IMG/VR virus record: IMGVR_UViG_3300025161_000004
Location: 124,001-188,000 of that record
Length of the DNA: 64,000 bases
Direction: 5' to 3' (one strand)
The translations under genes were made by a program, and so were the position numbers. Below, one piece after another: positions 3,566 through 62,855 of the stretch. How positions within the stretch are numbered: the stretch's first letter is position 1; every line of letters begins with the position of its first letter. A model generated the notes under the pieces. It saw only the letters and a program-made list of their open reading frames with translations. It was not told the origin of the DNA and ran no database searches.

Positions 3566-3573
3566 ATAAATAC
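3566..3573 (-). promoter_or_regulatory. Late promoter motif GTATTTAT
   Basis: Recurring motif upstream of structural genes. Confidence 0.6.
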
Positions 3574-3604
3574 TTTTTAAAAAAAATATAAATTTGACTT
3601 GACT

Positions 3605-3633
3605 TTTTATATTCTACTACGTAGAATATAAAA
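3605..3633. repeat. Perfect 13-bp inverted repeat TTTTATATTCTAC-tac-GTAGAATATAAAA
   Basis: Read directly from the sequence in the intergenic gap. Confidence 0.85.
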
Positions 3634-3801
3634 CACATAGAAAATAGACTGATTTTTTTAAATTTTTTTATCGAAAAAAAATGAGCAAAATAGTGCGCCT
3701 TAGACTTCGACATTACGATTTCACCGCACATCCTCTTTTTATTTTTGTTTTATTTTTTTATTTTTTACAAAACTTTATTACGGTGCTTTCGCAAAGTTTT
3801 G

Positions 3802-3834
3802 GCGAAAGTTACAAAATTTTTTTGACATTTGCAA
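3802..3834 (-). promoter_or_regulatory. Host-type promoter variant TTG-N20-TAACTTTCGC pointing into a non-coding gap
   Basis: Same spacing as the TTG-N20 promoters at 16262 and 17102. Confidence 0.45.
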
Positions 3835-3865
3835 GTGATTTAGAAAAAAAAATTAATATTTTTTT

Positions 3866-6433
3866 TTATCCTCTACCTTTTTGGGCAGCTACTGTGACAT
3901 CTACGATTTGTCTCGATAATGCTGATGCCATAGTTCTACCATCAACATTAATTATCGTATTTACATTTAAAGCCACTTCTTTTCTGTCAAATTCAACTTT
4001 TAATGGTTTACTAAATAAATCAGATAATTGAGATATAAAATTATTATTAGAGACATCTGCTTCAGCAATAGTTTTGATTGCTTTAGCTGTTTCAATAAAG
4101 TTAGTATTATCACCTGCCATAACTGCAGCAATACCACTAAAAGCTGTACCAACCTTTTCAAGTGTTCCACTATATAATGCCATAACTGTTAATGCCGCAG
4201 TTAATGCAGTAACACCAATTATACCTGTAGTAGATAATAATGCCAATGATCCTGCTATTCCAGCAAATGCTAATGTTACTGCTTTCATTTTTTCAATAGA
4301 TATATTCTGCATTAGTTTTGTCATTCCATCAGCCATAAACCCAATACCAGCTGCAGCAATACCTATACCAGCACCAATCATTAATATTGCACCTCCAAAA
4401 CCAAGCATCGGTAATGCAGCAGAACTAGCAGCAAAACCGAGAGCAATTACTGCAACAGACAATACACCAAATCCAATACCTAAATAACTTACAACATCTT
4501 TTAACAGTGCCATTTGATCAACATTTAATTCTTTTATACTTTCAGCTAATCCAGAAATACCTTTTGCGGCTAACCATATACCAGCACCTAAAGCAACAAA
4601 AGCAGCACCCATTGCCAATATTGTTTTAGGATTAATTTTTTTCATTTCATTAGTTACATTCTCACTAATACCGCCACTTGGCATTTGTTTTATATTACCA
4701 CCAGCGATATCTTTCATTTTTCCTTTTGCTTTTTCTTTTACTTTTTCTTTCGCTGCTTCACCAACAGTGCTTTGAATTGTGCCAGTAATTTCTTTTTTTG
4801 AAAAATAAGAACCAATCATTTGAGCACTTGTTTTTATTGCAGAAAATGATTTGGTTGTTAAATCCCAAAACTTTTTTCCAGCAACAAATACAATACTAAG
4901 TGCTGCAACCCATTTCATAGCTGATTTACCCCAATCAGGAATAGAATCAAATATATCATTAATACCTTTTAGAATCGGAGAAATTGTATCAAGAACTGCA
5001 TTTATACCTCTTAACGAAGGTAATAATGCAGCTTTCAATCCCTCAACTGTCGCTGCTAATTGTTCATTAAATGTTTGTGCTGCTTTAGCTCTTTCCTCTA
5101 AAGAGGTTTTTTGGGATTTTAATCCCTCGATTTCAGCTTTACTTAATTTAGATAATTCCTTTTTTTGATCACCAATCATTACATAAAACTTACCTGTACC
5201 CTTTTCGAATTGAGCCATACCTTCAATTACACTTCTATCTTCAGGATTAAGTATACCACTACTAGACATTTGCCTGCGCATTTCCTGTATCTTAGCCATT
5301 TGAATTGCTTGTTCAGCAAGTTCCTCTGTTGACATACCAAGTGCTTCGGCAGCTTTTGCTAATATATCTCTCGATTGAGGTGATGCTAAATCAAATTCAA
5401 AGCCCTCAGAAGTTTTACGTAATGTTGCCATTCCTTTGGTCATTTCATTAATTGTTTGCATGAATTTTTTGGGATCATTACGTGATTCATATAGCATTTT
5501 AAATGGATCGGTTTTAGCGAATTCACCACCTAATACTTGTAATTTTGATGCTAAATCAACCGCCCCCTCAAGAGTTCTGGCTTTATCTGCAGCATTTAAA
5601 GTGCTTTCCATATTAATTTTAAATTTCTCAGAATACATTGCCATATCAGACATACCAGCAACCCCTGTTTTAAATCCATATGTTGCTAATCTCTTAAAAT
5701 TAGCATTCATAGATTTTAATATTTTATTACTATTAAGACCAAATTTTTCGGATGAATCAACAATATTTTGAACAGTTTTAGCAGTATCCTCTGCATTAGT
5801 ACCAACTAATTCAAATTTACCAATTAATTCTCCAGCACCTTGAACACCTAATGCAGTTCCTTTTGCTATTCTTGTTACAGCAATTGCAGCTTCTTTATAG
5901 AGTAAAGTTTGTCTACCAGTTAATTCAGAATAAGTTGTTTGAATTTCCGATAGTTCTTGGAGATTAGAACCAAGATATGCTAATTCTACTGCCGAATCTT
6001 CAAAATTTTTGCGTAATATATTTGCTTTATTACCTGATAAGCCTAAATTAAGTATTGTTTGTCTAATTGCCTTATCAGATTGCATTAGATATGTAAAATA
6101 GTTTCTAGCACTATTAACTATACCTTCCCTAATATTTTTTAAATTTTCTAATCCTTGTTTTTGTTTTTCTATTTCTTTTCTTTGTTGTCCATAAATTTTT
6201 AATAGATTTTCATTAGCCTTTAAAGTGTTTTCATCACCTTCAAGAATTTTAGATCTTAAATTTTGAATTTTTTTATTTATTTCACCGTAATCTTTATTAA
6301 GATCATTTAATCTTCTTTGTGTACTAAAAATACCTTTTTGTGTATCAAATATACTTAATAATGTTCTTTCTTCACCCTCAAGAAGCTGATTAATTTTTTC
6401 TTGTAGTTTTAATCTTTCATTATCGATTGCCAT
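3866..6433 (-). CDS. Tail tape measure protein
   Basis: 855 aa, Ala/Gly/Lys-rich helical, hydrophobic C-terminal segments, directly downstream of the tail chaperone genes. Confidence 0.85.
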   Translation of the reverse strand: MAIDNERLKLQEKINQLLEGEERTLLSIFDTQKGIFSTQRRLNDLNKDYGEINKKIQNLRSKILEGDENTLKANENLLKIYGQQRKEIEKQKQGLENLKNIREGIVNSARNYFTYLMQSDKAIRQTILNLGLSGNKANILRKNFEDSAVELAYLGSNLQELSEIQTTYSELTGRQTLLYKEAAIAVTRIAKGTALGVQGAGELIGKFELVGTNAEDTAKTVQNIVDSSEKFGLNSNKILKSMNANFKRLATYGFKTGVAGMSDMAMYSEKFKINMESTLNAADKARTLEGAVDLASKLQVLGGEFAKTDPFKMLYESRNDPKKFMQTINEMTKGMATLRKTSEGFEFDLASPQSRDILAKAAEALGMSTEELAEQAIQMAKIQEMRRQMSSSGILNPEDRSVIEGMAQFEKGTGKFYVMIGDQKKELSKLSKAEIEGLKSQKTSLEERAKAAQTFNEQLAATVEGLKAALLPSLRGINAVLDTISPILKGINDIFDSIPDWGKSAMKWVAALSIVFVAGKKFWDLTTKSFSAIKTSAQMIGSYFSKKEITGTIQSTVGEAAKEKVKEKAKGKMKDIAGGNIKQMPSGGISENVTNEMKKINPKTILAMGAAFVALGAGIWLAAKGISGLAESIKELNVDQMALLKDVVSYLGIGFGVLSVAVIALGFAASSAALPMLGFGGAILMIGAGIGIAAAGIGFMADGMTKLMQNISIEKMKAVTLAFAGIAGSLALLSTTGIIGVTALTAALTVMALYSGTLEKVGTAFSGIAAVMAGDNTNFIETAKAIKTIAEADVSNNNFISQLSDLFSKPLKVEFDRKEVALNVNTIINVDGRTMASALSRQIVDVTVAAQKGRG

Positions 6434-6454
6434 ATTAATTGCAAATTATTTCTA

Positions 6455-6462
6455 ATAAATAC
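6455..6462 (-). promoter_or_regulatory. Late promoter motif GTATTTAT
   Basis: About 22 nt upstream of the tape measure ATG, directly after a terminator. Confidence 0.7.
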
Positions 6463-6472
6463 ACAATAAGCA

Positions 6473-6498
6473 AAAACCCTTCGAATTCGAAGGGTTTT
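6473..6498 (-). terminator. Rho-independent terminator (perfect 26-bp palindrome AAAACCCTTCGAATTCGAAGGGTTTT)
   Basis: Hairpin plus T-run directly after the stop of the gp51-like gene. Confidence 0.8.
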
Positions 6499-6712: not shown

Positions 6713-7663
6713 CTAAAGATTTGGGAAAAAAAAATCTACTCCCATTACTATGGGTGCTTTAAATGTATTACCTGCAGGTGATGTAAATTGATAGTTCATA
6801 TCTACACCAGGGCTAACATCTAATATTTTTTTTCTTAGAGTTAATGAATCCAAAGCTGGCATAGCATCAACAAATCTACTAATATACATTTTATCTCTTT
6901 TACCATCTATCTCGGTTATTTGTGTTTTTAATCTAAGTGTATTTAATTCATTATATTCCTGATTATATGCTTCTTTCATTGCGTCAGCTTTTTTTATTAC
7001 TTCATCAATTTCTCTTGAATTTAATAATCTAAATTTTACAATCTTTTTTCTCATGGGTAATTCTATTGTAAACTCACCATTTTCATCAGGAAATTCGGTT
7101 ATCTCTTTATTTTTTAATTTAGTTAAATCAATAGTTGCCTTAAATTGTTTTCCAGTAAATGGATCGGTGACATTCACATCATAATCCTTACCATATGATG
7201 ATGCTCTTAGAAAAATTAGAATAGCATCCTTATCTCCAACTAATAGATCGCCCACATTAACGTTAGGTGTCTTAATTTTGCGTTTAAGAATCACATCAAG
7301 TACAGTACCATTTTCTATAAGTGCTGGGGTTGTTAAAATATCTTCATCTTTCGATGTAAGATATTCAACCATTACTTCATCTAATCTATTTTTATAAAAT
7401 AAACCCTTTGATGGTAATTTAACAGTATCAACACCAACAATAAGATCGGGATCATTTTCAACACTTATTCTTTTTATATGTTCATCAAAGTTATTATCGA
7501 GTTTAGGAATTTGAGTTTGTGCTGTACTGAATTGATTTTCAGGAATTCCCTTTTGGGATAATGTTACGTTTTCGGTTTTAGTTTTATATGCTGCATTAGC
7601 TTCTTCTTTTTTTGCGTAATAATTTCTAAGCGATTCATTTAGTAATGACGATTCTTGATTCAT
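6713..7663 (-). CDS. Baseplate hub assembly / tail chaperone, T4 gp26-like
   Basis: VKLPSKGLFY...EYLTSKDEDILT...DKDAILIFLRASSYG...GVDFFFP pattern. Confidence 0.75.
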   Translation of the reverse strand: MNQESSLLNESLRNYYAKKEEANAAYKTKTENVTLSQKGIPENQFSTAQTQIPKLDNNFDEHIKRISVENDPDLIVGVDTVKLPSKGLFYKNRLDEVMVEYLTSKDEDILTTPALIENGTVLDVILKRKIKTPNVNVGDLLVGDKDAILIFLRASSYGKDYDVNVTDPFTGKQFKATIDLTKLKNKEITEFPDENGEFTIELPMRKKIVKFRLLNSREIDEVIKKADAMKEAYNQEYNELNTLRLKTQITEIDGKRDKMYISRFVDAMPALDSLTLRKKILDVSPGVDMNYQFTSPAGNTFKAPIVMGVDFFFPNL

Positions 7664-7707: not shown

Positions 7708-7715
7708 ATAAATAG
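7708..7715 (-). promoter_or_regulatory. Late promoter motif CTATTTAT
   Basis: Upstream of the gp26-like gene. Confidence 0.6.
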
Positions 7716-12045: not shown

Positions 12046-12870
12046 GTGATGAGAAAGAAAAAGGCTATTAAAAATGTAATTGTAGAGACATCAAGACCAA
12101 CACCTATAGAAAATACGGACGATACAATTAATAAAAATTATTTTGGTGAGAGAGAAGAGAAGGCATTAATTGACTATATCAATAGTGATTCTCCAGATGA
12201 AAGACAATTCATTTATAATACTATTCTAAAAAAGCCATTTCAAAAAATGGTTGAATCAATTTTAAGAAAATATCCTATTCATATAGGTAACTATGATATA
12301 AAAGAAATCGAAATGAATGGGTTGTCTCATCTTATTGAGAATATGGTTAAATTTAACCCAAATAAACTTAATAAAATGGGTCAAAAGGTGAGAGCATTTA
12401 GTTATTGTCAAACTATTGTTCGAAATTATTTTAAAGATCATGGTAGAAAAAGTTATAAAGAGAAAAAAACAATCCTTAGTTTTGATAACTATTCAGAAGA
12501 AATCCTTCATAGAGAGGAATATCTATATGAAATAGATAAAAATGAACATGATGAGTTACAATTATTGATCAATAATGTAATAGCTAAAATAAGAGAAAAA
12601 ATTGATACTGATAAGTCATTAAAAAAAAATGAAATTATTGTTGGAGATGCAATAGTGAATGTATTAGAAAATTGGCATGTATTGTTTTTAGAAGAGACCA
12701 AAGAAGGTAAATTCAACAAAAAAATTACAAATAACTATCAAAAAAATAAGATACTTTTATTTTTAAAAGAGCAAACGGGTTTATCCACAAAAGAAATACG
12801 ATTATCGATGAAATCATTCAAGGATATTTATTTTATTGAAAAAGCCATGTTCTATGGTAATGATGATTAA
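12046..12870 (+). CDS. Phage sigma factor, T4 gp55-like (late transcription)
   Basis: Sigma region-2-like segment KFNPNK...RAFSYCQTIVRNYF. Confidence 0.6.
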   Translation: MMRKKKAIKNVIVETSRPTPIENTDDTINKNYFGEREEKALIDYINSDSPDERQFIYNTILKKPFQKMVESILRKYPIHIGNYDIKEIEMNGLSHLIENMVKFNPNKLNKMGQKVRAFSYCQTIVRNYFKDHGRKSYKEKKTILSFDNYSEEILHREEYLYEIDKNEHDELQLLINNVIAKIREKIDTDKSLKKNEIIVGDAIVNVLENWHVLFLEETKEGKFNKKITNNYQKNKILLFLKEQTGLSTKEIRLSMKSFKDIYFIEKAMFYGNDD

Positions 12871-12885: not shown

Positions 12886-12893
12886 GTATTTAT
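12886..12893 (+). promoter_or_regulatory. Late promoter motif GTATTTAT
   Basis: Between two + strand genes, upstream of the spike operon. Confidence 0.65.
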
Positions 12894-12909: not shown

Positions 12910-13278
12910 ATGCCTAGAATTAAAAGAAAACAAATTAAATTTGATGAGGAAAGTGCGAACAATTTACTTCAGGAAATTTATAATGACTCGCATAATATTA
13001 GAGCAAAAATTACTATGCTTTTTAGAAAATGGGAAAAATATATTGACGACGAATCTAAAATTGCAGTATTAGGCGAACAAATAGTGAAACTTATTCAAGC
13101 AGAGGCAAAAAATCAAGACCAAAAAATACTTCTTTTAAAGTTCCTAAAAGAAGTCGCATATAAAGACGTTTCTAATAAAGAAAATGGGCAGGATGATTCT
13201 ACTAGTGGTGTAATATCAAATGAGAGAAGAAATGCGCTTTTAAATTTGGTAAAAAATGAATTAGAAGCTAAAAAATAA
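12910..13278 (+). CDS. Hypothetical protein (late operon)
   Basis: ATG at 12910 preferred over the TTG start; helical. Confidence 0.7.
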   Translation: MPRIKRKQIKFDEESANNLLQEIYNDSHNIRAKITMLFRKWEKYIDDESKIAVLGEQIVKLIQAEAKNQDQKILLLKFLKEVAYKDVSNKENGQDDSTSGVISNERRNALLNLVKNELEAKK

Positions 13279-17464: not shown

Positions 17465-17953
17465 TTAATAGTTTAAGATACATCTCCAAGGCTGTACAGT
17501 AAATGACACCATTTGCACAGCGTCAGAATCCATAGAGTTGTTACCAAAATCAACACTCGTAATCATGCATTGCTCCAAAAACCATTTTTCTACTTGAACT
17601 CCAGTAGGGTCAAGTGCTTTAATTATGAGATTTTTCTTATATCCAGCAGCATAACCCATACGACCAGTTAATGATTCTGCATGTAGACGAACCCATTCCA
17701 TAATTTGTGTTGACGTAGAAGGGCCTATCGTATCAATTAATTTAATATCAATTGTTTCCCATTTATATTTACCTGCAACATAGTTGGTTTCATTAATAAA
17801 AGGAATTTCAACTGCATTTATTGTCATAGAAGGTCTTTTAACCTCTTGTATTTTCCATTCTTCAATACCTAATTCAGTAGGGAACTCAAGAAAGAATCTA
17901 TTCTCTCTTTTAGGTTCATAATCGAAAGGTATACCACGGATAAGTTCTGCCAT
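17465..17953 (-). CDS. gp19: Tail tube protein (T4 gp19-like)
   Basis: YEPKRENRF...YVAGKYKWETIDI...QIMEWVR...GYAAGYKK...VEKW. Confidence 0.9.
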   Translation of the reverse strand: MAELIRGIPFDYEPKRENRFFLEFPTELGIEEWKIQEVKRPSMTINAVEIPFINETNYVAGKYKWETIDIKLIDTIGPSTSTQIMEWVRLHAESLTGRMGYAAGYKKNLIIKALDPTGVQVEKWFLEQCMITSVDFGNNSMDSDAVQMVSFTVQPWRCILNY

Positions 17954-18010: not shown

Positions 18011-18018
18011 ATAAATAC
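18011..18018 (-). promoter_or_regulatory. Late promoter motif GTATTTAT
   Basis: Between the sheath terminator and the tube gene (both minus strand). Confidence 0.7.
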
Positions 18019-20865: not shown

Positions 20866-20918
20866 ATAAATACTTCCTATTTTCTCAAAAACAAGAAATA
20901 AATCAGTTAAGTATTTAT
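20866..20918. promoter_or_regulatory. Divergent pair of late promoter motifs (20866-20873 minus; 20911-20918 plus)
   Basis: GTATTTAT on the sense strand of each flanking gene. Confidence 0.65.
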
Positions 20919-23613: not shown

Positions 23614-23668
23614 GAAATTCATATTTTCTGAGTATATCTATTTATATTAATACGAATTATCATTATAT

Positions 23669-25560: not shown

Positions 25561-25589
25561 TACATGTATTTATATAAAATTATACTAAT

Positions 25590-27416: not shown

Positions 27417-27441
27417 TCTTATATATTTTTTATAAATACTC

Positions 27442-33770: not shown

Positions 33771-33794
33771 TATTTTTATATAAATACTCAAAAA

Positions 33795-36831: not shown

Positions 36832-37072
36832 TGGATAATTTTTCCTATAAATAAATACAATCCTTATATTATAAAATATTATGAAATTTATTAAGAAATA
36901 AAAAAAATAGTTTTATAGGTAAGTAATGATTAAAACATGAAGTATAATGTTATAAAAATATTTATATAATGAATTTTTATTGATATTTAAATTTTTGTTT
37001 ATATGAATTGGATTTGTTATTTGATTTGATTCTGTAAGGTTTCTTATATTTTTATATTAATAGTATTGAAAC

Positions 37073-40224: not shown

Positions 40225-40315
40225 AGAAAATTGCCTTTATGTTTTTTTCTTAATTATAAATAGTAATTTATTTTTAAAAAGTACAGTTTTTTATAAAAAA
40301 TGGTAATTAAAAGAA

Positions 40316-41024: not shown

Positions 41025-41456
41025 TTAGTTTTTTTTCTTTTTATAAATACTATTTTCTTCTATAATTTTATATCTAGTTATAGTAGAATTAGGCTTATAA
41101 ACTATTATTATTTCACAATTATCAAGACAACTAATAATATGTTGTGTTTTTGGTGGTATTAATATGGTATTAGGTGAATGAACTAGGGCATGGTCATCAT
41201 GTTCTGGGAAATTAATATTTAATAATCCTTTCACACAAATAATTCTTTTAAATTCATTGTTCACAATAATCCCAGTACTATAATCCTTATCTAATCTCAA
41301 TATTTGATACGTAGTCTCACCATTATCATTAATAAATATATTATCACCATAAATTAATTCTACTTCATTTTTTTCGGCTAACTGTTCAATTCTTTCGTTT
41401 ATGTATGAATTAATCTTTTTTAGTGCCCTTAATTTATCATAGTTGTCGAGAGTCAT
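41025..41456 (-). CDS. Cupin-like protein
   Basis: FPEHDDH...ILIPPKTQHII; ATGA-coupled to the upstream gene. Confidence 0.5.
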   Translation of the reverse strand: MTLDNYDKLRALKKINSYINERIEQLAEKNEVELIYGDNIFINDNGETTYQILRLDKDYSTGIIVNNEFKRIICVKGLLNINFPEHDDHALVHSPNTILIPPKTQHIISCLDNCEIIIVYKPNSTITRYKIIEENSIYKKKKN

Positions 41457-41962: not shown

Positions 41963-42062
41963 TTTTTATTACTATCTTTAAAAATAAATACTGATTTTTC
42001 ATGCATAAACTATATATTGAACGGTTTTAATAGGATTACTATTTATATTTAAATTTTAAAAT

Positions 42063-46526: not shown

Positions 46527-46537
46527 CTAAGACATAT

Positions 46538-48183: not shown

Positions 48184-48257
48184 AAATTTTCCCTATATTT
48201 GATATATAATAAATACTACTTATTTTTTAAAAATAACATAGGTGACTATTTATAAAT

Positions 48258-50773: not shown

Positions 50774-50796
50774 TATATAAAATTTTATATTTTTTT

Positions 50797-50804
50797 ATAA
50801 ATAC
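50797..50804 (-). promoter_or_regulatory. Late promoter motif GTATTTAT
   Basis: Between terminase and portal (both minus strand). Confidence 0.7.
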
Positions 50805-52891: not shown

Positions 52892-52966
52892 ATATTGAAA
52901 TATATATTATAAATACTAAAAAAGACTATGTTTTTATAGTCTTAATTGGTACAATATATATTGGTA

Positions 52967-53533
52967 TCAGAATTTTATTTGAAAAAAGTCTTCGTCTGTT
53001 GATTCTTTAGTATCATCAATTTCGATTTCTTCTTGTTCTTTTTTAAGAACTTTATCTACTTGTTTTTGTGGTTTTGTTTTCGATTTAGATTTTGTTGCGG
53101 TAAAGTTATTTCCTTTTAATATGACATCTCTTTCATATAGTAAATCTTTTACCTGATCAACCGTCATTCCATAATGAAAAACCAAAAGAGGCATATCACC
53201 ATATAATGCATTATATTCTGGGTCACTTTGATAGTCCTCATCTTCGTAAGCCAAAGCCTGTATCGAATGATACCCATGCATGTATGGTCTATCATCAGAC
53301 TCATGTAAACAGATCAATTGAAATAGATTTGTTTTAAGAGTATAAATTTCACTAATGGCATCTTCAGATGGGGGTTCGGCATTAGATGACGCTGGAATTT
53401 TAGTCCAACCCCATGCTTCGGCATCTACTGATTCGGGATCATCACTAAATATGAATTCATATATTCCTTCATCTTTAGAATTATATCCCACTTTATTTAC
53501 ATAGATAAGTTTCAGTTCTTTTTCTTTCTTCAT
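52967..53533 (-). CDS. Hypothetical protein
   Basis: 188-aa ORF coupled to the upstream gene. Confidence 0.7.
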   Translation of the reverse strand: MKKEKELKLIYVNKVGYNSKDEGIYEFIFSDDPESVDAEAWGWTKIPASSNAEPPSEDAISEIYTLKTNLFQLICLHESDDRPYMHGYHSIQALAYEDEDYQSDPEYNALYGDMPLLVFHYGMTVDQVKDLLYERDVILKGNNFTATKSKSKTKPQKQVDKVLKKEQEEIEIDDTKESTDEDFFQIKF

Positions 53534-56013: not shown

Positions 56014-56112
56014 TTTAATCAATATTTAAAGAAATTATTCTTATTACATTTTTTTATAAATACTATTTTTTTTCTCAAAAAAACATAAATCATGAGTTAA
56101 ATTAATACTTAT

Positions 56113-56144
56113 ATAACCATAAATACCACTTTTTCGTATAATAT
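56113..56144 (+). promoter_or_regulatory. Promoter ATAACCA-N14-TCGTATAATAT (copy 2)
   Basis: Same boxes and spacing as 23582-23613. Confidence 0.6.
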
Positions 56145-56630: not shown

Positions 56631-57839
56631 AAAGTCAATTTTTTGCATTTTAACTTTTGGTACTTGTATTTTACAAACTGAAATGTCTTGTTTACCTGCC
56701 CTTTTTTGTGGTTTAATCTTACCACCCTCTTGTCTAATTCTCATACTCAAATAATCATAATTTGGCATTTCCTCAATTTTATCAATCATAACAGTACCTG
56801 TTATAACAACATTTACGTATTGAAATTGTTTGTAGTCTTCGATATTTTCAAGTGGTGGATCTTGAGCTTTTGATTTCCAAAATTTTGAATCGATATTATT
56901 GTTTTTATATGCTTGAATGTATTTAGGGTTCACCTCATAAGGACTTTTAGGTCCGCTTGTTCCATCACCATTTGTTCCATATGGATCTATTGACACCATA
57001 TCATCAGTAATTTCGGTAACATTATCACCACACCCTCCGAAACTAGTTTTCATACCAACCATTATATTTTTCAGAGCATTAGCTCTTTCAGTTGAAAGCT
57101 CCAACCAAGTTTTTCCTTCAGATTCTCTAGTATTTCTTAAGGTGCTTGAGGATGATACAATTTCTATTTTATCTATCTTGGTGTAACTATCCATTATTTC
57201 TTGTAGTTTATTTTTTAATTCTTCTATATTTTTTAATTCAGAACTATTAAACGCAAAATAACTACCAACAGGTGTTGAAGAGGTGGTATATACTGTATCA
57301 ACACTAACCTCCCTAACAATTTTTTTTCCGATATTCACCATTTTACCACCAATTTGATCTGGTGATAATTTACTATTAATTATCAGTCCAAAATCAATTT
57401 TTGAAATATCTGAAAGTTTATTTATTCTATCTCTAATTGCTTTTAATACTTCGATTTTTTTTTCTTGTGGTAATTGATTATATCTACTGAGAACTACTCT
57501 ATCGAATTTCTCGGCATGTTTTATAAATGCTTTTTCAATTTGATTTAGGTCAATTTTTTTTCCGGAAACAATTTGTTCTGCTTTTGTTATATTTTCTTGC
57601 GGAACACCAGCTGCTCGCAATTCTTGTGCGCTAACATTATTAGCCATTAATCCTGCAATAACACCAACAGTTAATAGCCCTCTCCTTAAATAATCTTTAA
57701 GGGTGTCAGATATTGCTTCATCGATTTGTTCAGACTCATTTAATGTATTTTTCAAATATTCTATCTTTTCTAAAATAGAATTCACTACTTTTCTTTCAAG
57801 TAGTGCATTGTATTGCGATTCTTTAATTATTATTTTCAT
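56613..57839 (-). CDS. OmpA-like domain protein with N-terminal propeptide-like region and internal hydrophobic segment
   Basis: YFAFNSSEL...IEIVSSSSTLRN...ELSTERANA...QYVNVVI. Confidence 0.6.
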   Translation of the reverse strand: MKIIIKESQYNALLERKVVNSILEKIEYLKNTLNESEQIDEAISDTLKDYLRRGLLTVGVIAGLMANNVSAQELRAAGVPQENITKAEQIVSGKKIDLNQIEKAFIKHAEKFDRVVLSRYNQLPQEKKIEVLKAIRDRINKLSDISKIDFGLIINSKLSPDQIGGKMVNIGKKIVREVSVDTVYTTSSTPVGSYFAFNSSELKNIEELKNKLQEIMDSYTKIDKIEIVSSSSTLRNTRESEGKTWLELSTERANALKNIMVGMKTSFGGCGDNVTEITDDMVSIDPYGTNGDGTSGPKSPYEVNPKYIQAYKNNNIDSKFWKSKAQDPPLENIEDYKQFQYVNVVITGTVMIDKIEEMPNYDYLSMRIRQEGGKIKPQKRAGKQDISVCKIQVPKVKMQKIDFKKRGF

Positions 57840-59421
57840 ATTCTAAAGATAATTTTTTATTTAAACTATTAAATAATGCATTCTTTATTTTTTTTAAGTA
57901 ACCATTATTTCTTAATATTTTAAATACGAGATTTTCTGTGGAAAATTCACCTTCGCTTTCTAATCCAGCTTTCCTATAATTTTTTAATTTTTCTTTTAAT
58001 GTGTTTAGTAAGCTAATTTTAATATCATTATCATCTAAACTTTCAAGATGATCAATTAGATTCATTAATGAAGCCGATTTTAGTTGTATGTCTGATGTGT
58101 CGATACCTATAACTTGCTTAATTGGTTTTTCAATCCATTGATCTTTTATTAGTGAATATACACCAGTACTATTTACATCTTCATTAATATCTTCAACATA
58201 AAGTTCAACATCATATCCTTTTACCTTTGCTTTTATTTTTGTTTCCCACAAACTCTTTTTCGTTTTGAATAATTCTCTAAGGGTATCTTCATCGGCATCT
58301 AATTCATTGAAATCAATTACAATATGAACATCTAAATCAGAAAAATCAGTCCAAGTGTAATTAGCCAAACTTCCAGTAAATCTAATATCTTTGATTGGTA
58401 ACTTTTCTAAGTTAAGAAACTTTATAAATTCTATAGCATTTTTTAGTAGAGCTGCCCTTACTTGAGGTTGTAATTTGTTTTCGTTTTTCCAAATCTTAGG
58501 ATTTAGTTGGTCTTTTACTTTGAGATATTCAACCCCAATACTTTTAGGGTCGACAATTTCATTCAAAATATCACTAACCTTTTTAGTTGACCAAAATTTA
58601 CATGACCAATATCTTGGTGTAGTTTTATCTGTGGCAGTATCACAGTTATGTCTTGCTCTAAATGATTTTCTTCTTTCTGGATCATCTCTTTTGATTTCCA
58701 TATTTGGATCACCAAAATTAACTTTCTTTATATTACCAGTTTTTTTATCTCTAACATAAACTTTATATTTTTTAACATCACCTCTCATTGGTTTATTGAG
58801 TGGTTTATTTTTTTTACTCTCAAAAACCTTAAGTGATGTTTGGTTTCTATTTTCCGATGCCCATTTTAAATAGTCTGGATTATTTTTTGCAAAGTCCATT
58901 TCCATTTTTTGCATTTTTTTTTCAGCATCTTTTATCCATTCAAAACTACCATAGTATTTGTATATTTCATTAGCTAATACTTCACTATCTGACGAGATTT
59001 TTTTATATTCTTTTTCTGAAAAATCTCCACCTTTTGACTGATTATACTTCATTATATTTTGTTGAAATTCAAGATCAATCCATTTATCAATCAAAGTATT
59101 TGTTTCTTCTGACACATCATAATCCTCAACAATATCATATAATTCATATTTTTCATCTAAATAATTCGATAAATACTCATTAATAAACTTACCGTATCTA
59201 AACAATTTTTTAGATGCCTCTTCATCAAAGTCCAAAATTTTATATGAAGTAAATAAATTAGATAGTGGTATACTTACTGGTAATGCTGCTTGTTTTCTCA
59301 GAGATTTAAATTTAATTTCCCTATTCTCACCTATCATCTCTTTAAGAAGAATTTCAGCCTCATTAAGTATTTCACCGATATTATTTAATCTACTACTTTG
59401 ATTTTTTTGCATAAAACGCAT
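57823..59421 (-). CDS. Multidomain protein with C-terminal Pol-beta-superfamily nucleotidyltransferase
   Basis: FTGSLANY...SDLDVH...DVELYVE; central KKVNFGDPNMEIKRDDPERRKSFRARHNC...YWSC domain; late motif at 59427-59434. Confidence 0.8.
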   Translation of the reverse strand: MRFMQKNQSSRLNNIGEILNEAEILLKEMIGENREIKFKSLRKQAALPVSIPLSNLFTSYKILDFDEEASKKLFRYGKFINEYLSNYLDEKYELYDIVEDYDVSEETNTLIDKWIDLEFQQNIMKYNQSKGGDFSEKEYKKISSDSEVLANEIYKYYGSFEWIKDAEKKMQKMEMDFAKNNPDYLKWASENRNQTSLKVFESKKNKPLNKPMRGDVKKYKVYVRDKKTGNIKKVNFGDPNMEIKRDDPERRKSFRARHNCDTATDKTTPRYWSCKFWSTKKVSDILNEIVDPKSIGVEYLKVKDQLNPKIWKNENKLQPQVRAALLKNAIEFIKFLNLEKLPIKDIRFTGSLANYTWTDFSDLDVHIVIDFNELDADEDTLRELFKTKKSLWETKIKAKVKGYDVELYVEDINEDVNSTGVYSLIKDQWIEKPIKQVIGIDTSDIQLKSASLMNLIDHLESLDDNDIKISLLNTLKEKLKNYRKAGLESEGEFSTENLVFKILRNNGYLKKIKNALFNSLNKKLSLEYENNN

Positions 59422-59476
59422 TTTTTATAAATACTTATAAAAGGACTATTAGTATTTATGTGAAACTAATATTTTA

Positions 59477-61453
59477 ATGGAATTAAAGTGTCTTAATGAT
59501 ATAATTCATAATGGTTTAGCGATTCACATTGATTTAACTAATTCAAAATCATGGGATCTCAATAATAAATTTACATTAATTAGTTTAAATCAATGGAAAA
59601 ATGCTAAATCGGATAACATATTTTTATATGATTTTGGTTTAACGGCATTTGATAATGGTAGAGTTTCTAATATGTATGATACTCTGTCACTAACTCCAAA
59701 CGATACCAAAGTTAAACTTTATAGAGTAGGTTATAACACTGAAACTGGTGGTACTTTCTATGATGGTTATGGTATAACTGGTGTGACAGAAAATGGATAT
59801 ATATATGGTTTAGAATTTACTGGTATTACTGCAAATACTACATTTACTGGCGATAGTTTTGTGGGTAGACATTTAAACCTTAATGGTGGTTATTTACAAG
59901 GATTTTTTAAATTATATAATTATAACTATGAGTTATTTCCATCAAGATTAAATGGCATTACAATTGAAACTGTTGTTAGAATTGATGAGAATTCATACTC
60001 TAATAATGGTATTTTGTTCATGATGGGAGCTAGATCAGAAGATAAATATAATGATCCATTTTCTGGTGAGACAATTCTTTTGTCCACCTATAAAACTAAA
60101 ACAGAAAAGAATGGAATTATTGAGTATCTTGATTCATATAATTCATATTCGGGAATAACTACTGGTGAAGCTAATTACTTAGCAGCATATAAAACTGGAA
60201 CTACGATACCTAATGGTGTTAAAAATTTGGATAATAAATATAATGAAATTTATATTAGACAGAAAAAAAATTCTATAAATGGTAATGTTATTGCTTTACA
60301 GTTAACTACAGATGGTTATCTTGGTTTTAAATATATCGATGACGATGGAATATTACATAACCAAATATCATCGAATAAAATTAGTACTGGTTGGACTATA
60401 ATCACATTAACATTTAAACCATATGAAATAATTACTAATCCAGATTTACTCGAATGTGCTGAAAAAAGAAAGGGAGATTTAGCTGTATATGTAAATGGTA
60501 GACTGTTCTGGAAAATTAAAGAGTTTGATGAATTCTATTTTAAAAATATTAAAAATCAAAAAGAAAAACAATTGGGTGTTCCATATAATATTTCTTGGGG
60601 TGGTGGTAGTTTTGGATTGAGACACTCATATCATTGGGATGTGAACAAGAGAATATTATATAATGGGAATGATCAGTCATATATTAACTCTAATTTTAAA
60701 TTAGATCTAAACCCATTAGTGGACTACTCGTGCATTACTACTACTGGAATGACTGGTACTTCAGCAACAACAGGAATACAACTTCTAATGAATGATACTC
60801 TATTCTATAGTATTGATATTTGTGATCCACAAATAGAACTACCAGTCACTGTATTGGAGATAAGAAATCTTACTGGAGTTACTCCGACTAAATCGAAATA
60901 TTATATTGAATTTATACCCTCATTTGAATTATTAAGTAATAGAGATTATGTTTTATCTGCTAAGATTTATGATACTGGAATATTCAGAAACACGAATAAC
61001 TCAACTCAATTACCAACAATGAATAAAATATCGTTAGTTGTTTATGGAACTACAGATATCAATGTACTTAATGAAGTGACTTATCGTGGTACAACCCCTA
61101 ATAAATGGTCTGATTTAAGTTTAAAGTTTAGATTAAAAGATAATACTGGTTTACAAACAATTTTTGTTGGGATATACATCGAATCAGATGAACCATTAGT
61201 AGATGGTTTTAGGTTATATATTGATGATTATACTTTAACGGGATCAGATAAATTATCAAAAGATTTATCCAAAAACGATTTACTAATAGAAAATAATTTT
61301 AGTAATTCATTTGTTGGTGGATTACAAAAATTAAGAATTTATGACTATGCATTTACATCGGAAGAAGCATTACATAATGCATATTGGGAATCAAAAAAGA
61401 ATCCAAATTTAAATTTAAATGTTGTTAAGGGAGGTAGAATAATATTTAGATAG
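59477..61453 (+). CDS. Structural protein with LamG/ConA-like beta-sandwich
   Basis: WTIITLTF...LAVYVNG...ISWGGG...GGLQKLRIYDYAFTSEE; late motif at 59452-59459. Confidence 0.65.
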   Translation: MELKCLNDIIHNGLAIHIDLTNSKSWDLNNKFTLISLNQWKNAKSDNIFLYDFGLTAFDNGRVSNMYDTLSLTPNDTKVKLYRVGYNTETGGTFYDGYGITGVTENGYIYGLEFTGITANTTFTGDSFVGRHLNLNGGYLQGFFKLYNYNYELFPSRLNGITIETVVRIDENSYSNNGILFMMGARSEDKYNDPFSGETILLSTYKTKTEKNGIIEYLDSYNSYSGITTGEANYLAAYKTGTTIPNGVKNLDNKYNEIYIRQKKNSINGNVIALQLTTDGYLGFKYIDDDGILHNQISSNKISTGWTIITLTFKPYEIITNPDLLECAEKRKGDLAVYVNGRLFWKIKEFDEFYFKNIKNQKEKQLGVPYNISWGGGSFGLRHSYHWDVNKRILYNGNDQSYINSNFKLDLNPLVDYSCITTTGMTGTSATTGIQLLMNDTLFYSIDICDPQIELPVTVLEIRNLTGVTPTKSKYYIEFIPSFELLSNRDYVLSAKIYDTGIFRNTNNSTQLPTMNKISLVVYGTTDINVLNEVTYRGTTPNKWSDLSLKFRLKDNTGLQTIFVGIYIESDEPLVDGFRLYIDDYTLTGSDKLSKDLSKNDLLIENNFSNSFVGGLQKLRIYDYAFTSEEALHNAYWESKKNPNLNLNVVKGGRIIFR

Positions 61454-61455
61454 TT

Positions 61456-61662
61456 ATGGCTGAACTAGAAGAAATATACTCGGGCTGGAAAAATTATATT
61501 TTCCCAAATAAAGAAACTGAAGAATTGGCTAAGAAAAGAATCAGTATATGCTTTTCTTGTACGAATTATAAACAAAAAATAAATAGATGTAATATTTGTG
61601 GATGCTTTATGCCAGCAAAGGTTAGATCAATAAATTCATCATGTCCACTAAAAAAGTGGTAA
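61456..61662 (+). CDS. Small Cys-rich (probable Zn-binding) protein
   Basis: CFSC...CNICGC...CPLKKW. Confidence 0.75.
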   Translation: MAELEEIYSGWKNYIFPNKETEELAKKRISICFSCTNYKQKINRCNICGCFMPAKVRSINSSCPLKKW

Positions 61663-61663
61663 T

Positions 61664-62074
61664 TTATTGAGCAAATACCACTAAAAATGTATCTTCAAGA
61701 AATTCTATTGAATGTGTTGTGTATTTTTTTACCTTAAAGGTTTCAAATGAATTTATTATGGTAGATGAATTTAAAAAATTTATCTTCATTTTTCCAAATA
61801 AACAAATGTATGATTCGTTAAATTCATGAACATGATTATCAATAACAGTGTCTTTTTTTATGTAGTAAACTTTTACCCTATCATCTTTATTTGGCATGTC
61901 ATTAATACATGTAAGATGAACTCCCTTATCCTTTAAAAAATCAAGTATTTTATGATATTCAGTCTCATGAATAATACTAAGTGCATTATTAATTTGATTG
62001 ATTAATAACGCTTCCTTTTTTTTTGATATTAATCTATTAGCCTTATCGATTGCTATCTCGAAAGACGGACTCAT
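61664..62074 (-). CDS. Cupin domain protein
   Basis: NHVHEFNESYICLFGKMKI...KYTTHSI; late motif at 62092-62099. Confidence 0.7.
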   Translation of the reverse strand: MSPSFEIAIDKANRLISKKKEALLINQINNALSIIHETEYHKILDFLKDKGVHLTCINDMPNKDDRVKVYYIKKDTVIDNHVHEFNESYICLFGKMKINFLNSSTIINSFETFKVKKYTTHSIEFLEDTFLVVFAQ

Positions 62075-62144
62075 TTTTTTTGTATTTTTTTATAAATACT
62101 ATAAATACGTCAAAAAATGAAAAAAATCATACATGATAATTACA

Positions 62145-62795
62145 TCAACCATAATTTATTAGTAATTTCTTAATAAATTTTCTTTTAAATATTGGTTTTA
62201 TCGTGAATTCGAAATTTTCTTTGGGTGGTGTTTCTACTATAAAGTAGTTTTTTTGATATCTATTTTTGAAAAAAGTATTCTCGGATATATCAGTTAATTC
62301 TAATACAAATAATTCATCTGAAGTAAGTTTTTTATTTAAAAAGTATTCATAATAATATTTTTTAATATTATCTATAATTACAATATAACCTGAGTATAAT
62401 GAAAAGTTGCTAACAATATTTCCATCAATATTGATTTTTGATTCAATTTCATCATATAATTTAGAATACGATAAAAATAAACTATCGAATATTTCCTTTC
62501 CAAATTCTGCTGTTTCTACTATGTCATTTAATGATGAATCATTTATTAATGATCTATATATAATTTTTTGTTCGATTACATCTAAACCTATAATTTCTTT
62601 TTTTCCATTTTCGAAAACATAAATATTATCTAAAAAAATGTCGATATAATTTTTATTAGCAATAATATCAATAAAATCAGGATAAAGTAATCTATGTCTG
62701 AATCGCTCTCTTTTCTCTTTTTCATAAGCAAGCAACAAATACTTCTTGTATTCAAAATCAATTGGGTTGTTTATAAGCCAACCTTTATTTAACAT
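62145..62795 (-). CDS. Hypothetical protein
   Basis: Late motif at 62811-62818. Confidence 0.7.
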   Translation of the reverse strand: MLNKGWLINNPIDFEYKKYLLLAYEKEKRERFRHRLLYPDFIDIIANKNYIDIFLDNIYVFENGKKEIIGLDVIEQKIIYRSLINDSSLNDIVETAEFGKEIFDSLFLSYSKLYDEIESKINIDGNIVSNFSLYSGYIVIIDNIKKYYYEYFLNKKLTSDELFVLELTDISENTFFKNRYQKNYFIVETPPKENFEFTIKPIFKRKFIKKLLINYG

Positions 62796-62855
62796 AGATA
62801 TAATTTAAATATAAATACTTGTTTGATATTTTTAAAGTATTTATTTTTGTTGTTT

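What the first reader, a model, noticed from the sequence alone, without database searches (positions are those of the whole stretch)
3566..62844. Late promoter motif STATTTAT is the reverse complement of the T4 late promoter
Seen: (G/C)TATTTAT occurs on the sense strand about 5-80 nt upstream of structural genes. Minus-strand copies: 3566, 6455, 7708, 18011, 20866, 27432, 33780, 36851, 40256, 41043, 41984, 48209, 50797, 52909, 56056, 59427, 62092, 62811. Plus-strand copies: 12886, 20911, 23638, 25566, 42039, 48246, 59452, 62837. Orientation is unambiguous between co-oriented genes (6455, 18011, 41043, 50797, 12886, 25566). Established: T4 gp55 recognises TATAAATA on the non-template strand. 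Inference: the divergent gp55-like sigma (12046) reads a different -10 box, or the site acts from the opposite strand.
Basis: partly seen in the sequence, partly recalled or inferred. Interest (0 to 1): 0.6.

Follow-up and report, generated by a model that had tools for sequence, protein, structure and literature searches.

The report
Late promoter of uncultured jumbo phages
A short DNA word, GTATTTATA, sits just upstream of the virion and lysis genes of this uncultured giant phage and hundreds of relatives; it is most likely their late promoter, a two-base variant of the phage T4 late promoter read in the usual direction by a very divergent phage sigma factor.

Summary
All 26 listed sites exist. 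GTATTTAT is the most enriched strand-aware 8-mer upstream of genes in the 247-kb viral contig: 54 of its 92 copies lie within 80 nt upstream on the sense strand, against 2.8 expected. Between co-oriented genes it is sense 41 times and antisense once. It usually ends 12-27 nt before the start codon, has no -35 partner, and precedes sheath, tube, portal, terminase, protease and endolysin genes but not replication genes. Eighty related contigs keep it upstream of the portal gene.

TATTTATA is the reverse complement of T4's TATAAATA, but that box is nearly palindromic. The same fact reads as "T4 box, same orientation, central AA changed to TT". Two of the three adenines that gp55 flips out are kept.

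ORF 12046 has no sequence-family hit. Its model has a sigma region-2 fold (Z 8-10), and homologues give weak gp55 or Sigma70_r2 hits. Flavobacterium phage immuto and Microcystis phage Mel-JY01 carry this sigma, no Sigma70_r2-type (Pfam PF04542) sigma, and (A/C)TATTTATA upstream of structural genes.

Verdict: a new variant of the T4-type late promoter and sigma pair. Opposite-strand action is not supported. No transcript data were available.

The parts
3566..3573 (-). GTATTTAT site, 75 nt upstream of the 987-aa gene 527-3490 (-). Both flanking genes are on the minus strand.
6455..6462 (-). GTATTTAT site, 21 nt upstream of the 855-aa gene 3866-6433 (-). Flanking genes are co-oriented.
7708..7715 (-). 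CTATTTATA variant, 44 nt upstream of the baseplate hub gene 6713-7663 (-).
12886..12893 (+). GTATTTAT site, 16 nt upstream of gene 12910-13278 (+), directly after the sigma-like ORF. It starts a unit that runs towards the baseplate genes.
18011..18018 (-). GTATTTATAAAAAA site, 57 nt upstream of the tail tube gene 17465-17953 (-). Flanking genes are co-oriented.
20866..20873 (-). GTATTTATAAAAAA site, 72 nt upstream of the tail sheath gene 18082-20793 (-). It stands back-to-back with the 20911 site.
20911..20918 (+). GTATTTATAAAT site, 23 nt upstream of the 694-aa gene 20942-23026 (+).
23638..23645 (+). CTATTTATA variant, 23 nt upstream of gene 23669-24799 (+).
25566..25573 (+). GTATTTATATAAAA site, 16 nt upstream of gene 25590-26345 (+). 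Flanking genes are co-oriented.
27432..27439 (-). GTATTTATAAAAAA site, 15 nt upstream of gene 26649-27416 (-).
33780..33787 (-). GTATTTATATAAAA site, 22 nt upstream of gene 32639-33757 (-), in a divergent spacer of only 37 nt.
36851..36858 (-). GTATTTAT site, 19 nt upstream of the small ORF 36670-36831 (-).
40256..40263 (-). CTATTTATAA variant, 31 nt upstream of gene 38809-40224 (-). The major head protein gene 37121-38776 follows it.
41043..41050 (-). GTATTTATAAAAAG site, 19 nt upstream of the head maturation protease gene 40316-41023 (-). It lies in the 3' end of the upstream co-oriented gene.
41984..41991 (-). GTATTTAT site, 21 nt upstream of gene 41453-41962 (-).
42039..42046 (+). CTATTTATA variant, 16 nt upstream of the 1487-aa gene 42063-46526 (+).
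48209..48216 (-). GTATTTAT site, 25 nt upstream of gene 47389-48183 (-).
48246..48253 (+). CTATTTATAAATA variant, 4 nt upstream of the called start of gene 48258-48629 (+). Either the start is miscalled or the mRNA is near-leaderless.
50797..50804 (-). GTATTTATAAAAAA site, 23 nt upstream of the portal gene 48674-50773 (-). It is conserved in all 79 related loci that retain the portal upstream region (80 fetched).
52909..52916 (-). GTATTTATAATATA site, 17 nt upstream of the large terminase gene 50840-52891 (-).
56056..56063 (-). GTATTTATAAAAAA site, 42 nt upstream of the 826-aa gene 53533-56013 (-).
56119..56126 (-). Second GTATTTAT copy, 105 nt upstream of the same gene.
59427..59434 (-). GTATTTATAAAAAA site, 14 nt upstream of gene 57823-59412 (-). 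It stands back-to-back with the 59452 site, 17 nt apart, in a 64-nt spacer.
59452..59459 (+). GTATTTAT site, 17 nt upstream of the 658-aa gene 59477-61453 (+).
62092..62099 (-). GTATTTATAAAAAA site, 17 nt upstream of gene 61664-62074 (-).
62101..62108 (-). Tandem second copy, GTATTTATA-GTATTTATA, 26 nt upstream of the same gene.
62811..62818 (-). GTATTTATA site, 15 nt upstream of gene 62145-62795 (-).
62837..62844 (+). GTATTTAT site, 134 nt upstream of gene 62979-63344 (+). This is the weakest assignment, because the distance is atypical.
12046..12870 (+). Candidate late sigma factor (273 aa from the ATG at 12049). The N-terminal domain, residues about 31-140, has a sigma region-2 fold. The C-terminal helical domain of about 115 aa has no clear match. 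The gene has no GTATTTAT of its own and sits in a motif-less unit that starts at the PhoH-like gene 7795.

Best explanation
GTATTTATA, in full a-GTATTTAT-A-n-a-a-A-A, is the single -10-like core of this phage's late promoters. It is read on the non-template (sense) strand in the same orientation as T4's TATAAATA. It differs from that box only at the two central positions (AA to TT) and has a strongly preferred 5' G. There is no -35 element.

Transcription probably starts a few bases downstream, near the conserved A-A five to six bases after the motif. That would give short, A-rich leaders without a Shine-Dalgarno sequence.

The host core RNA polymerase is probably directed to these sites by a phage-encoded, very divergent sigma factor: the product of ORF 12046-12870. 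This protein has a sigma region-2 fold and is distantly gp55-like. Its gene lies in a motif-less unit, presumably early or middle, so the arrangement would form a T4-style temporal cascade.

Shown: the existence of the motif, its strandedness, position, conservation and gene association, and the sigma fold of the ORF. Inferred: promoter function, the start site, and which sigma reads the motif.
For: 1. Enrichment. It is the top strand-aware 8-mer, with 54 of 92 copies in the sense-upstream 80 nt (p = 2e-50), against 2.8 expected from the local background.

2. Orientation. There are 41 sense copies and 1 antisense between co-oriented genes, and 0 in convergent spacers. Copies in divergent spacers mostly lie next to their own gene. 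The complete relative G001 gives 49 to 7.

3. Geometry.
- The motif ends mostly 12-27 nt before the ATG. The median is 23 nt, against 27 nt for T4's TATAAATA measured the same way.
- Upstream information content is near zero, so there is no -35.
- Positions +5 and +6 after the motif are A in 44 and 41 of 54 sites.
- Spacers of 37-64 nt holding one or two back-to-back copies leave no room for another promoter.

4. Method control. The same k-mer test on T4 returns TATAAATA as the top hit.

5. Gene classes.
- The motif precedes sheath, tube, portal, TerL, head protease and endolysin genes.
- It is absent at rIIA, SbcC-like, helicase, DnaB-like, ThyA, exonuclease and PhoH genes.

6. Conservation.
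- All 79 related loci that retain the portal upstream region (80 fetched; portal 56-84% identical) keep aGTATTTATAAAAAA upstream of the portal gene.
- In 55 of those loci of at least 8 kb, 390 of 517 copies are sense-upstream.
- Three complete relatives carry 122-147 copies, against 51-80 for the control word.

7. Relation to T4. gp55 reads the non-template strand and flips A-12, A-9 and A-8 (PMC7892883). In TATTTATA the equivalents of A-12 and A-8 are kept and only -10 and -9 change.

8. Sigma.
- The AF2 model of ORF 12046 matches sigma region-2 domains. Examples are sigB 8x6g_H (Z 9.9, rmsd 2.6 A over 91 residues), RpoS sigma2 5h6x_A (Z 8.6) and sigE sigma2 bound to -10 DNA, 4lup_C (Z 8.4). 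Nearly all of the top 38 rows are sigma factors.
- The gp55 PHROG hits the immuto homologue (E = 0.008).
- My own gp55 HMM ranks that homologue first outside T4 (E = 0.004) and ranks the G001 homologue first in G001 (E = 0.06).
- Sigma70_r2 hits the LR756508 homologue (E = 0.006).
- Near neighbours in the ESM Atlas are named sigma factor, and in one cluster 21% of members carry PF04542.
- hhalign against nine gp55 sequences aligns 102 columns in register from the N-terminus (E = 0.0025). It places gp55 Y97, which stacks on A-12, on an invariant Y119.

9. Co-occurrence. Flavobacterium phage immuto and Microcystis phage Mel-JY01 have a homologue of this ORF and no PF04542-type sigma. They use (A/C)TATTTATA and ATATTTATA upstream of structural genes. 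The core therefore follows this sigma family across two host phyla.
Against: - There are no transcript data. No RNA run was listed, so promoter activity, the start site and late timing are all inferred.
- The window ORF itself has no significant sequence match to any sigma or gp55 model. The hhalign probability is only 12%, and helical-domain Z scores of 8-10 are not decisive on their own (note).
- The contig also encodes an ECF-like sigma, and relatives have 2-3 of them. G002 and G003 additionally carry a 115-aa mini-gp55 that looks more T4-like than ORF 12046.
- A few genes with the motif are not classically late: RNR large subunit at 89 nt, a tRNA nucleotidyltransferase fusion at 61 nt, and a glycosyltransferase.
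- The conserved A-A lies 1-2 nt closer to the box than T4's +1 would predict.
- The contig is only about 79% complete.
Confidence: 0.62

Rival explanations
1. The motif is a late promoter, but a different factor reads it: the ECF-like sigma at contig 46288-46938 (outside the window), a sigma lying in the missing ~21% of the genome such as the mini-gp55 seen in G002 and G003, or the host's own sigma helped by a phage protein. ORF 12046 would then control another gene class.
For: - A bona fide Sigma70_r2 protein is encoded in the contig (51.7 bits), with ECF and SigH-type PDB matches.
- Relatives have 2-3 such genes.
- G002 and G003 carry a 115-aa ORF with a clear gp55-type motif, NFNPDRSDNVYAYIVTII (E = 4e-7).
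- The contig is about 79% complete.
Against: - Immuto and Mel-JY01 use the same TATTTATA core yet have no PF04542 sigma and no mini-gp55. Their only sigma-like gene is the ORF 12046 homologue.
- The complete relative G001 has 122 motif copies but no mini-gp55.
- ECF sigmas normally need a -35 box, and none is present.
- The motif does not fit the Bacteroidota host consensus TAnnTTTG. That consensus appears instead, weakly, upstream of motif-less genes.
Confidence: 0.2
2. The element acts in the RNA, not the DNA. It would be a conserved 5'-UTR signal for translation, stability or processing on transcripts that start further upstream.
For: - Its position relative to start codons is fixed, and the leaders are A-rich with no Shine-Dalgarno sequence.
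- The portal leader downstream of the motif is also conserved.
Against: - No other conserved element lies upstream that could serve as the promoter.
- Divergent spacers of 37-64 nt with back-to-back copies leave no room for one.
- The element has the same form and geometry as T4's DNA-level late box.
- In Mel-JY01 the motif sits further upstream, a median of 35 nt, ahead of an ordinary Shine-Dalgarno sequence. It therefore tracks transcription units rather than the ribosome site.
Confidence: 0.07
3. Opposite-strand reading. The sigma would recognise T4's TATAAATA on the template strand, yet transcription would proceed in the sense direction. The only precedent is AR9 non-virion RNAP gp226, which reads template-strand bases.
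For: - The template strand reads exactly TATAAATA(C) at 38 of 54 sites.
- The model's N-terminal domain also aligns with a chain of the AR9 non-virion RNAP holoenzyme structure (7s01_A, Z 8.2; I take chain A to be gp226 from memory, not checked).
Against: - The relation follows automatically from a near-palindromic box with a two-base change, so it needs no special mechanism.
- The match to the AR9 chain is no better than the matches to ordinary sigma2 domains (Z 8-10).
- gp55 and other sigma2 domains bind the non-template strand with fixed polarity (PMC7892883). Two of the three flipped adenines are kept on the non-template strand here.
- The strictly required 5' G would become a 3' C outside T4's box.
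Confidence: 0.04
4. The pattern is a by-product of AT-rich intergenic composition.
For: The genome is 28.5% GC, and the window-wide excess of STATTTAT is only 34 against 20.
Against: - There are 54 sense-upstream copies against 2.8 +/- 1.7 expected from a model of the same upstream sequences.
- The strand bias is 41 to 1.
- ATATTTAT and TTATTTAT are not enriched.
- The motif is conserved across 79 related loci while the flanks vary.
Confidence: 0.01

Closest known systems
Phage T4 late promoters (TATAAATA at -13 to -6) read by gp55, with gp33 and the gp45 sliding clamp
   Same: - A single 8-9 bp A/T-rich -10-like box with no -35.
- It lies upstream of virion, packaging and lysis genes.
- The distance to the start codon is similar, a median of 23 against 27 nt.
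- Six of eight box positions are identical in the same orientation, and the 5' G matches T4 P23.
- The adenines equivalent to A-12 and A-8 are retained.
- The phage is T4-related in portal, terminase, sheath and major head protein.
   Different: - The central AA is TT (positions -10 and -9).
- The 5' G is nearly obligatory here, whereas T4 prefers T or G.
- The candidate sigma is 273 aa, against 185 for gp55. It has an extra C-terminal domain of about 115 aa with no clear match and no significant sequence match to gp55.
- No gp33 was sought or found. Only a doubtful clamp hit was seen (E = 0.0013), so clamp dependence is unknown.
Late-gene upstream motifs of Flavobacterium phage vB_FspM_immuto and Microcystis phage Mel-JY01. 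I derived these here and found no publication describing them.
   Same: - The same TATTTAT(A) core lies on the sense strand upstream of structural genes.
- Both phages have a homologue of ORF 12046 (24-28% identity). In immuto it sits in the same neighbourhood, with a phosphohydrolase gene two genes upstream and baseplate genes downstream.
   Different: - The 5' base is A or C in immuto and A in Mel-JY01, not G. GTATTTAT itself is not enriched in immuto: 12 copies against 11 for the control.
- Mel-JY01 has longer leaders with a Shine-Dalgarno sequence.
Bacteroidota housekeeping promoters (-33 TTTG, -7 TAnnTTTG). The consensus is recalled from the literature and was not checked against a paper here.
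   Same: Both are A/T-rich boxes starting with TA close to the start site. The phage's presumed host is probably from this phylum, given leaders without a Shine-Dalgarno sequence, TAnnTTTG-like boxes upstream of motif-less genes, and a Flavobacterium phage as the nearest cultured relative.
   Different: GTATTTATA lacks the TTTG end and has no -33 partner. The two motifs precede different gene sets.
AR9 / PBS1 non-virion RNAP promoter recognition by gp226 (template-strand reading)
   Same: gp226 is a sigma-like specificity subunit of a jumbo phage. The N-terminal domain of the model aligns to 7s01_A, which I take from memory to be gp226, with Z 8.2.
   Different: No phage multisubunit RNAP was found in the contig (PF00623 gave no hit). 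Nothing here requires template-strand reading.

Membership tests
T4-type late promoter | The box sequence is TATAAATA on the non-template strand. | tested here: not met
   The sense strand reads TATTTATA, which matches 6 of 8 positions with the central AA changed to TT. TATAAATA itself shows no sense-upstream excess in this contig: 21 against 49 for TATTTATA.
T4-type late promoter | A single -10-like element with no -35 element. | tested here: met
   Information content is 0.32 bits or less at every position from -40 to -2 relative to the motif in 54 sites.
T4-type late promoter | It precedes late genes (virion, packaging, lysis) and not early or replication genes. | tested here: met
   - Present at sheath, tube, portal, TerL, protease and endolysin genes.
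- Absent at rIIA, SbcC-like, helicase, DnaB-like, ThyA, exonuclease and PhoH genes.
- Exceptions are the RNR large subunit, a tRNA nucleotidyltransferase fusion and a glycosyltransferase.
- Timing itself was not measured.
T4-type late promoter | Transcription starts about 6 nt downstream of the box, late in infection. | not testable with these tools
   No RNA run was listed for this sequence.
T4-type late promoter | It depends on gp55, gp33 and a DNA-loaded sliding clamp. | not testable with these tools
   This needs biochemistry. Only a doubtful clamp-family hit was found (E = 0.0013, inside a 1220-aa ORF). gp33 was not searched.
gp55 late sigma family (phrog_234) | A significant sequence match to the family model. 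| tested here: not met
   - The window ORF has no PHROG hit, and phrog_234, phrog_12791 and T4 gp55 give no hit in the contig.
- Homologues score weakly: immuto E = 0.008 and 0.004, G001 E = 0.06 but ranked first.
- hhalign gives E = 0.0025 at 12% probability.
gp55 late sigma family (phrog_234) | A sigma region-2 homology domain that binds the clamp helices and the -10 non-template strand. | tested here: inconclusive
   The fold is met: residues 31-140 match sigma2 domains at Z 8-10 with rmsd 2.6-3.0 A over 91-96 residues. In a low-confidence alignment, gp55 Y97 aligns with invariant Y119, H95 with F117, T99 with Q121 and N13 with E34. Binding was not tested.
gp55 late sigma family (phrog_234) | No sigma4 domain; a C-terminal sliding-clamp-binding motif. 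| tested here: inconclusive
   The protein has an additional C-terminal helical domain of about 115 aa (pLDDT 83). Its best matches reach only Z 5.8 or less, and sigma4 regions of sigma28, SigH and AlgU appear at Z 4.8-5.1 within the noise. It ends in a conserved aromatic and acidic tail of unknown meaning.
Sigma-70 family (Pfam Sigma70_r2, PF04542) | A match to Sigma70_r2 above the gathering score. | tested here: not met
   The window ORF has no Pfam hit. The LR756508 homologue scores 15.7 bits against a cut-off of 24 (E = 0.006). One neighbouring ESM Atlas cluster has PF04542 in 21% of its members.
Bacteroidota sigmaA promoter (-33 TTTG / -7 TAnnTTTG) | A -7 box ending in TTTG, with a -33 TTTG 17-21 bp upstream. 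| tested here: not met
   The motif ends in TATA and has no conserved upstream partner. TTG-N18-22-TAnnTTTG occurs instead upstream of 11 other genes.

The most novel reading that the evidence does not exclude
The sigma-like protein reads T4's TATAAATA on the template strand, with inverted polarity as in AR9 gp226, while transcription runs in the sense direction. This would make the clade a second, independent case of template-strand promoter recognition, and the first using host RNA polymerase. My evidence does not exclude it. The template strand does read TATAAATA at most sites, and the fold match cannot tell sigma2 domains apart from the AR9 holoenzyme chain it also hits. But nothing requires it.
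Probability: 0.04. Interest if true: 0.85.

Novelty: new variant of a known kind. Interest (0 to 1): 0.55.

Why it matters
- **Transcription map for an uncultured clade.** The motif gives a usable late-transcription map for a large group of jumbo phages. At least 353 related portal loci and 749 homologues of the sigma-like protein exist in public data, and almost nothing in them is annotated. Any gene preceded by GTATTTATA can be provisionally called late.
- **A function for an unannotated family.** It assigns a probable function, late sigma factor, to a highly conserved protein family that has no Pfam or PHROG annotation. Cultured phages of Flavobacterium and Microcystis share this family, so the idea can be tested at the bench.
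- **A natural specificity experiment.** The same promoter architecture as T4 carries a two-base change at exactly the positions next to or in the shallow -9 pocket of gp55. A diverged sigma goes with it, and the 5' flanking base varies between lineages (G, A/C, A).
- **A caution for motif reading.** The reverse complement of a near-palindromic box is not evidence of inverted function.

Tried and rejected
- **Near-identical phage DNA.** Megablast of 20 kb against GenBank phages gave no match, so no annotated close relative exists.
- **Sequence identification of ORF 12046.**
  - Pfam, PHROGs and PDB phmmer gave nothing.
  - A family profile against PDB gave only chance gp41 hits.
  - hhalign against the single T4 gp55 sequence gave nothing useful.
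- **Canonical gp55 in the contig.** The T4 gp55 protein, phrog_234 and phrog_12791 found no candidate.
- **Phage RNA polymerase.** PF00623 had no hit, so a phiKZ- or AR9-type multisubunit RNAP is unlikely. Single-subunit RNAP families were not searched.
- **Sliding clamp.** phrog_223 gave only E = 0.0013 inside a 1220-aa ORF, which I do not trust.
- **RNA evidence.** No RNA run was listed.
- **C-terminal domain.** Folded alone and searched against 48,161 chains, it gave no clear match.
- **Literature.** I found no paper describing a TATTTATA phage promoter or the promoters of immuto or Mel-JY01. The late motif reported for Ma-LMM01 is a different, SigA-like one.
- **MotA-box-like -30 activator site.** Rejected, because the start codon lies only 12-27 nt downstream.
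- **Stop-codon recoding.** Suggested by a tRNA with anticodon CTA. Rejected, because TAG ends 37 genes and reading it as sense does not lengthen ORFs.

Full report
**What the window is.** The window is bases 124,001-188,000 of a single 246,768-bp IMG/VR viral contig. The contig is linear, about 79% complete by CheckV, and 28.5% GC. It has no near-identical relative among GenBank phages. It does encode a T4-type portal, large terminase, tail sheath, tail tube, head maturation protease, major head protein and baseplate proteins. Its nearest cultured relatives are distant: Microcystis phage Mel-JY01 and Flavobacterium phage vB_FspM_immuto, with portals 37-39% identical. At least 353 related portal loci exist in IMG/VR, including complete genomes of 325-365 kb.

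**Checking the observation.**
- All 26 coordinates carry (G/C)TATTTAT on the stated strand. Each lies upstream of a gene on that strand.
- In the window, GTATTTAT occurs 25 times against 9.7 +/- 3.0 in shuffles.
- A strand-aware count over the whole contig is much stronger. GTATTTAT is the most enriched of all 8-mers in the 80 nt upstream of genes. There are 54 of 92 copies in 4% of the stranded sequence (p = 2e-50), while its reverse complement occurs there 14 times.
- A second-order Markov model trained on those same AT-rich upstream regions expects 2.8 +/- 1.7 copies.
- The 5' G is important. ATATTTAT and TTATTTAT are common in the genome but not upstream of genes, and CTATTTAT is a minor variant.
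- Aligning 54 sites gives a-GTATTTAT-A-n-a-a-A-A with essentially no information further upstream, so there is no -35.
- The motif ends mostly 12-27 nt before the start codon.

**Orientation.** In spacers between co-oriented genes the motif is on the sense strand 41 times and on the antisense strand once (p = 2e-11). Convergent spacers hold none. In divergent spacers each copy mostly lies next to the gene whose sense strand carries it, sometimes back-to-back only 17 nt apart. The complete relative G001 shows 49 sense to 7 antisense. A T4-oriented TATAAATA promoter on the other strand would transcribe antisense into the upstream gene, so that reading is rejected.

**Gene classes.** The motif precedes the sheath, tube, portal, terminase, head protease, baseplate-related units and an endolysin. 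It is missing upstream of rIIA, SbcC-like nuclease, two helicases, a DnaB-like helicase, thymidylate synthase, an exonuclease and PhoH. Three exceptions carry it at atypical or ordinary distances: RNR large subunit (89 nt), a tRNA nucleotidyltransferase fusion (61 nt) and a glycosyltransferase. Long stretches of small genes at both contig ends lack it. Some of these have boxes resembling the Bacteroidota host consensus TAnnTTTG.

**Conservation.** All 79 related loci that retain the portal upstream region (80 fetched; one is cut within the motif) keep aGTATTTATAAAAAA about 24 nt before the portal ATG, although their portals are only 56-84% identical. Across 55 loci of at least 8 kb, 390 of 517 copies are sense-upstream. 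The same k-mer procedure on T4 returns TATAAATA as the top word, which validates the method.

**What the reverse-complement relation means.** TATTTATA is indeed the reverse complement of TATAAATA. But TAT-AA-ATA is quasi-palindromic, so its reverse complement is the same box with only the central AA replaced by TT. Read in the same orientation, six of eight positions agree. The 5' G also matches T4's P23 late promoter, GTATAAATA (oligonucleotide in PMC7892883). That paper shows that gp55's sigma-R2 domain binds the non-template strand and flips three adenines:
- A-12 into a deep pocket, stacking on Y97.
- A-9 into a shallow pocket lined by N13 and H95.
- A-8 into a deep pocket, contacting T99.

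With the box at -13 to -6, the new motif keeps the adenines at -12 and -8 and changes only -10 and -9. The economical reading is therefore an ordinary, same-strand, T4-type late promoter with a changed centre.

**The sigma.**
- ORF 12046-12870 (273 aa from the ATG at 12049) has no Pfam, PHROG or PDB sequence hit.
- It belongs to a family of at least 749 proteins that are 60-86% identical, which makes it more conserved than the portal.
- Its AlphaFold model has mean pLDDT 72. Residues 31-140 match sigma region-2 domains at Z 8-10 and rmsd 2.6-3.0 A, and nearly all of the top 38 structural matches are sigma factors.
- Weak but concordant sequence signals come from homologues:
  - phrog_234 (gp55) hits the immuto homologue over model positions 5-117 (E = 0.008).
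  - An HMM I built from nine diverse gp55 sequences ranks that homologue first outside T4 (E = 0.004).
  - The same HMM ranks the G001 homologue first in that genome (E = 0.06).
  - Sigma70_r2 hits the LR756508 homologue (E = 0.006).
  - Neighbouring ESM Atlas clusters are named sigma factor.
- hhalign of the family against gp55 aligns 102 columns in register (E = 0.0025, probability 12%). It places Y97 on invariant Y119, while the -9 pocket residues N13 and H95 fall on E34 and F117. This fits the changed -9 base, but the alignment is too weak to lean on.
- The C-terminal domain of about 115 aa folds confidently (pLDDT 83) but has no clear structural match.

**Linking sigma and motif.** The contig also has an ECF-like sigma outside the window, and relatives have two or three. 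Two relatives add a 115-aa mini-gp55. Three observations nonetheless favour the ORF 12046 family:
- Immuto and Mel-JY01 have no PF04542 sigma and no mini-gp55. They do have the ORF 12046 homologue, and they use (A/C)TATTTATA and ATATTTATA upstream of structural genes.
- The complete relative G001 has the motif in 122 copies and no mini-gp55.
- The core box therefore follows the ORF 12046 family across phages of two host phyla. This is the main argument for the assignment, and it remains an inference.

The sigma gene itself lacks the motif and sits in a motif-less unit that begins at the PhoH-like gene. The next gene downstream begins with a motif, as expected for a cascade.

**Limits.** No RNA data could be found. 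Promoter activity, the start site, late timing and the identity of the reader protein are all unverified.

Noticed in passing
contig 46288-46938 (-), outside the window (L083:1117-1767): A 216-aa ECF/SigH-like sigma factor: Sigma70_r2 at 49-52 bits, with PDB matches to ECF sigmas. Complete relatives carry 2-3 such genes, so these jumbo phages encode several sigma factors. Its target promoters are unknown.
   Followed up: partly
L134:980-1324 (-) in G002 and L135:986-1339 (-) in G003: Two complete relatives encode a 115-118-aa 'mini-gp55' with a clear T4 gp55-type region-2 motif, NFNPDRSDNVYAYIVTII (phrog_234 E = 4e-7). No counterpart exists in this contig, in G001, in immuto or in Mel-JY01.
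   Followed up: partly
contig 193,958-196,862, 215,675-227,143 and 230,500-231,505 (L092, L093, L094): ARAGORN tRNA genes in three clusters (one has an unassigned two-base anticodon), including one with anticodon CTA (amber-reading, labelled Pyl) at contig 230,500-230,572. TAG still ends 37 predicted genes, and reading it as sense does not extend ORFs, so the standard code seems to apply.
   Followed up: partly
upstream of motif-less genes, e.g. contig 46974-48008, 104968-105660, 216173-216448, 237055-237486: Boxes of the form TTG-N18-22-TAnnTTTG occur there, and TATATTTG is found 8 times sense-upstream and 0 times antisense. This matches the Bacteroidota housekeeping promoter consensus as I recall it. 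It suggests a Bacteroidota host and host-sigma transcription of early genes. The enrichment is modest: 11 of 54 copies in 5.6% of the sequence.
   Followed up: partly
window 50774-50796 and the portal upstream regions of L003-L082: The portal leader downstream of the motif (nTATAAAAwwTTATAAwAATG) is itself conserved across the clade. Most relatives also carry a second, upstream (T)GTATTTAT(A) copy about 40 nt before the main one, near the terminase stop codon.
   Followed up: no
Flavobacterium phage immuto NC_055915, about 60-76 kb (L099): About 20 small genes share a long, nearly identical upstream element, ttcnTATATTTAGGTATCAATAATTAAAAC. This is probably the early-promoter class of that phage, and it is distinct from its (A/C)TATTTATAA late class.
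   Followed up: no
window 12046-12870, C-terminal residues about 258-273: The sigma-like protein family ends in a conserved aromatic and acidic tail, ...K.FKEIYFLEK..FF.D(D/E). T4 gp55 ends in a sliding-clamp-binding motif. Whether this tail plays that role was not tested.
   Followed up: no
contig 80257-80604 (-), inside the 1220-aa ORF 77818-81480 (L002): The only hit to the T4 gp45 sliding-clamp family (phrog_223) is weak, E = 0.0013, and lies inside a very long ORF. No convincing clamp gene was identified in the contig.
   Followed up: no
window 48246-48253; contig 27161, 52805, 221315, 244151: A few motif copies end only 4-7 nt before the called start codon. Either the start is miscalled or the mRNAs are leaderless or nearly so.
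   Followed up: no
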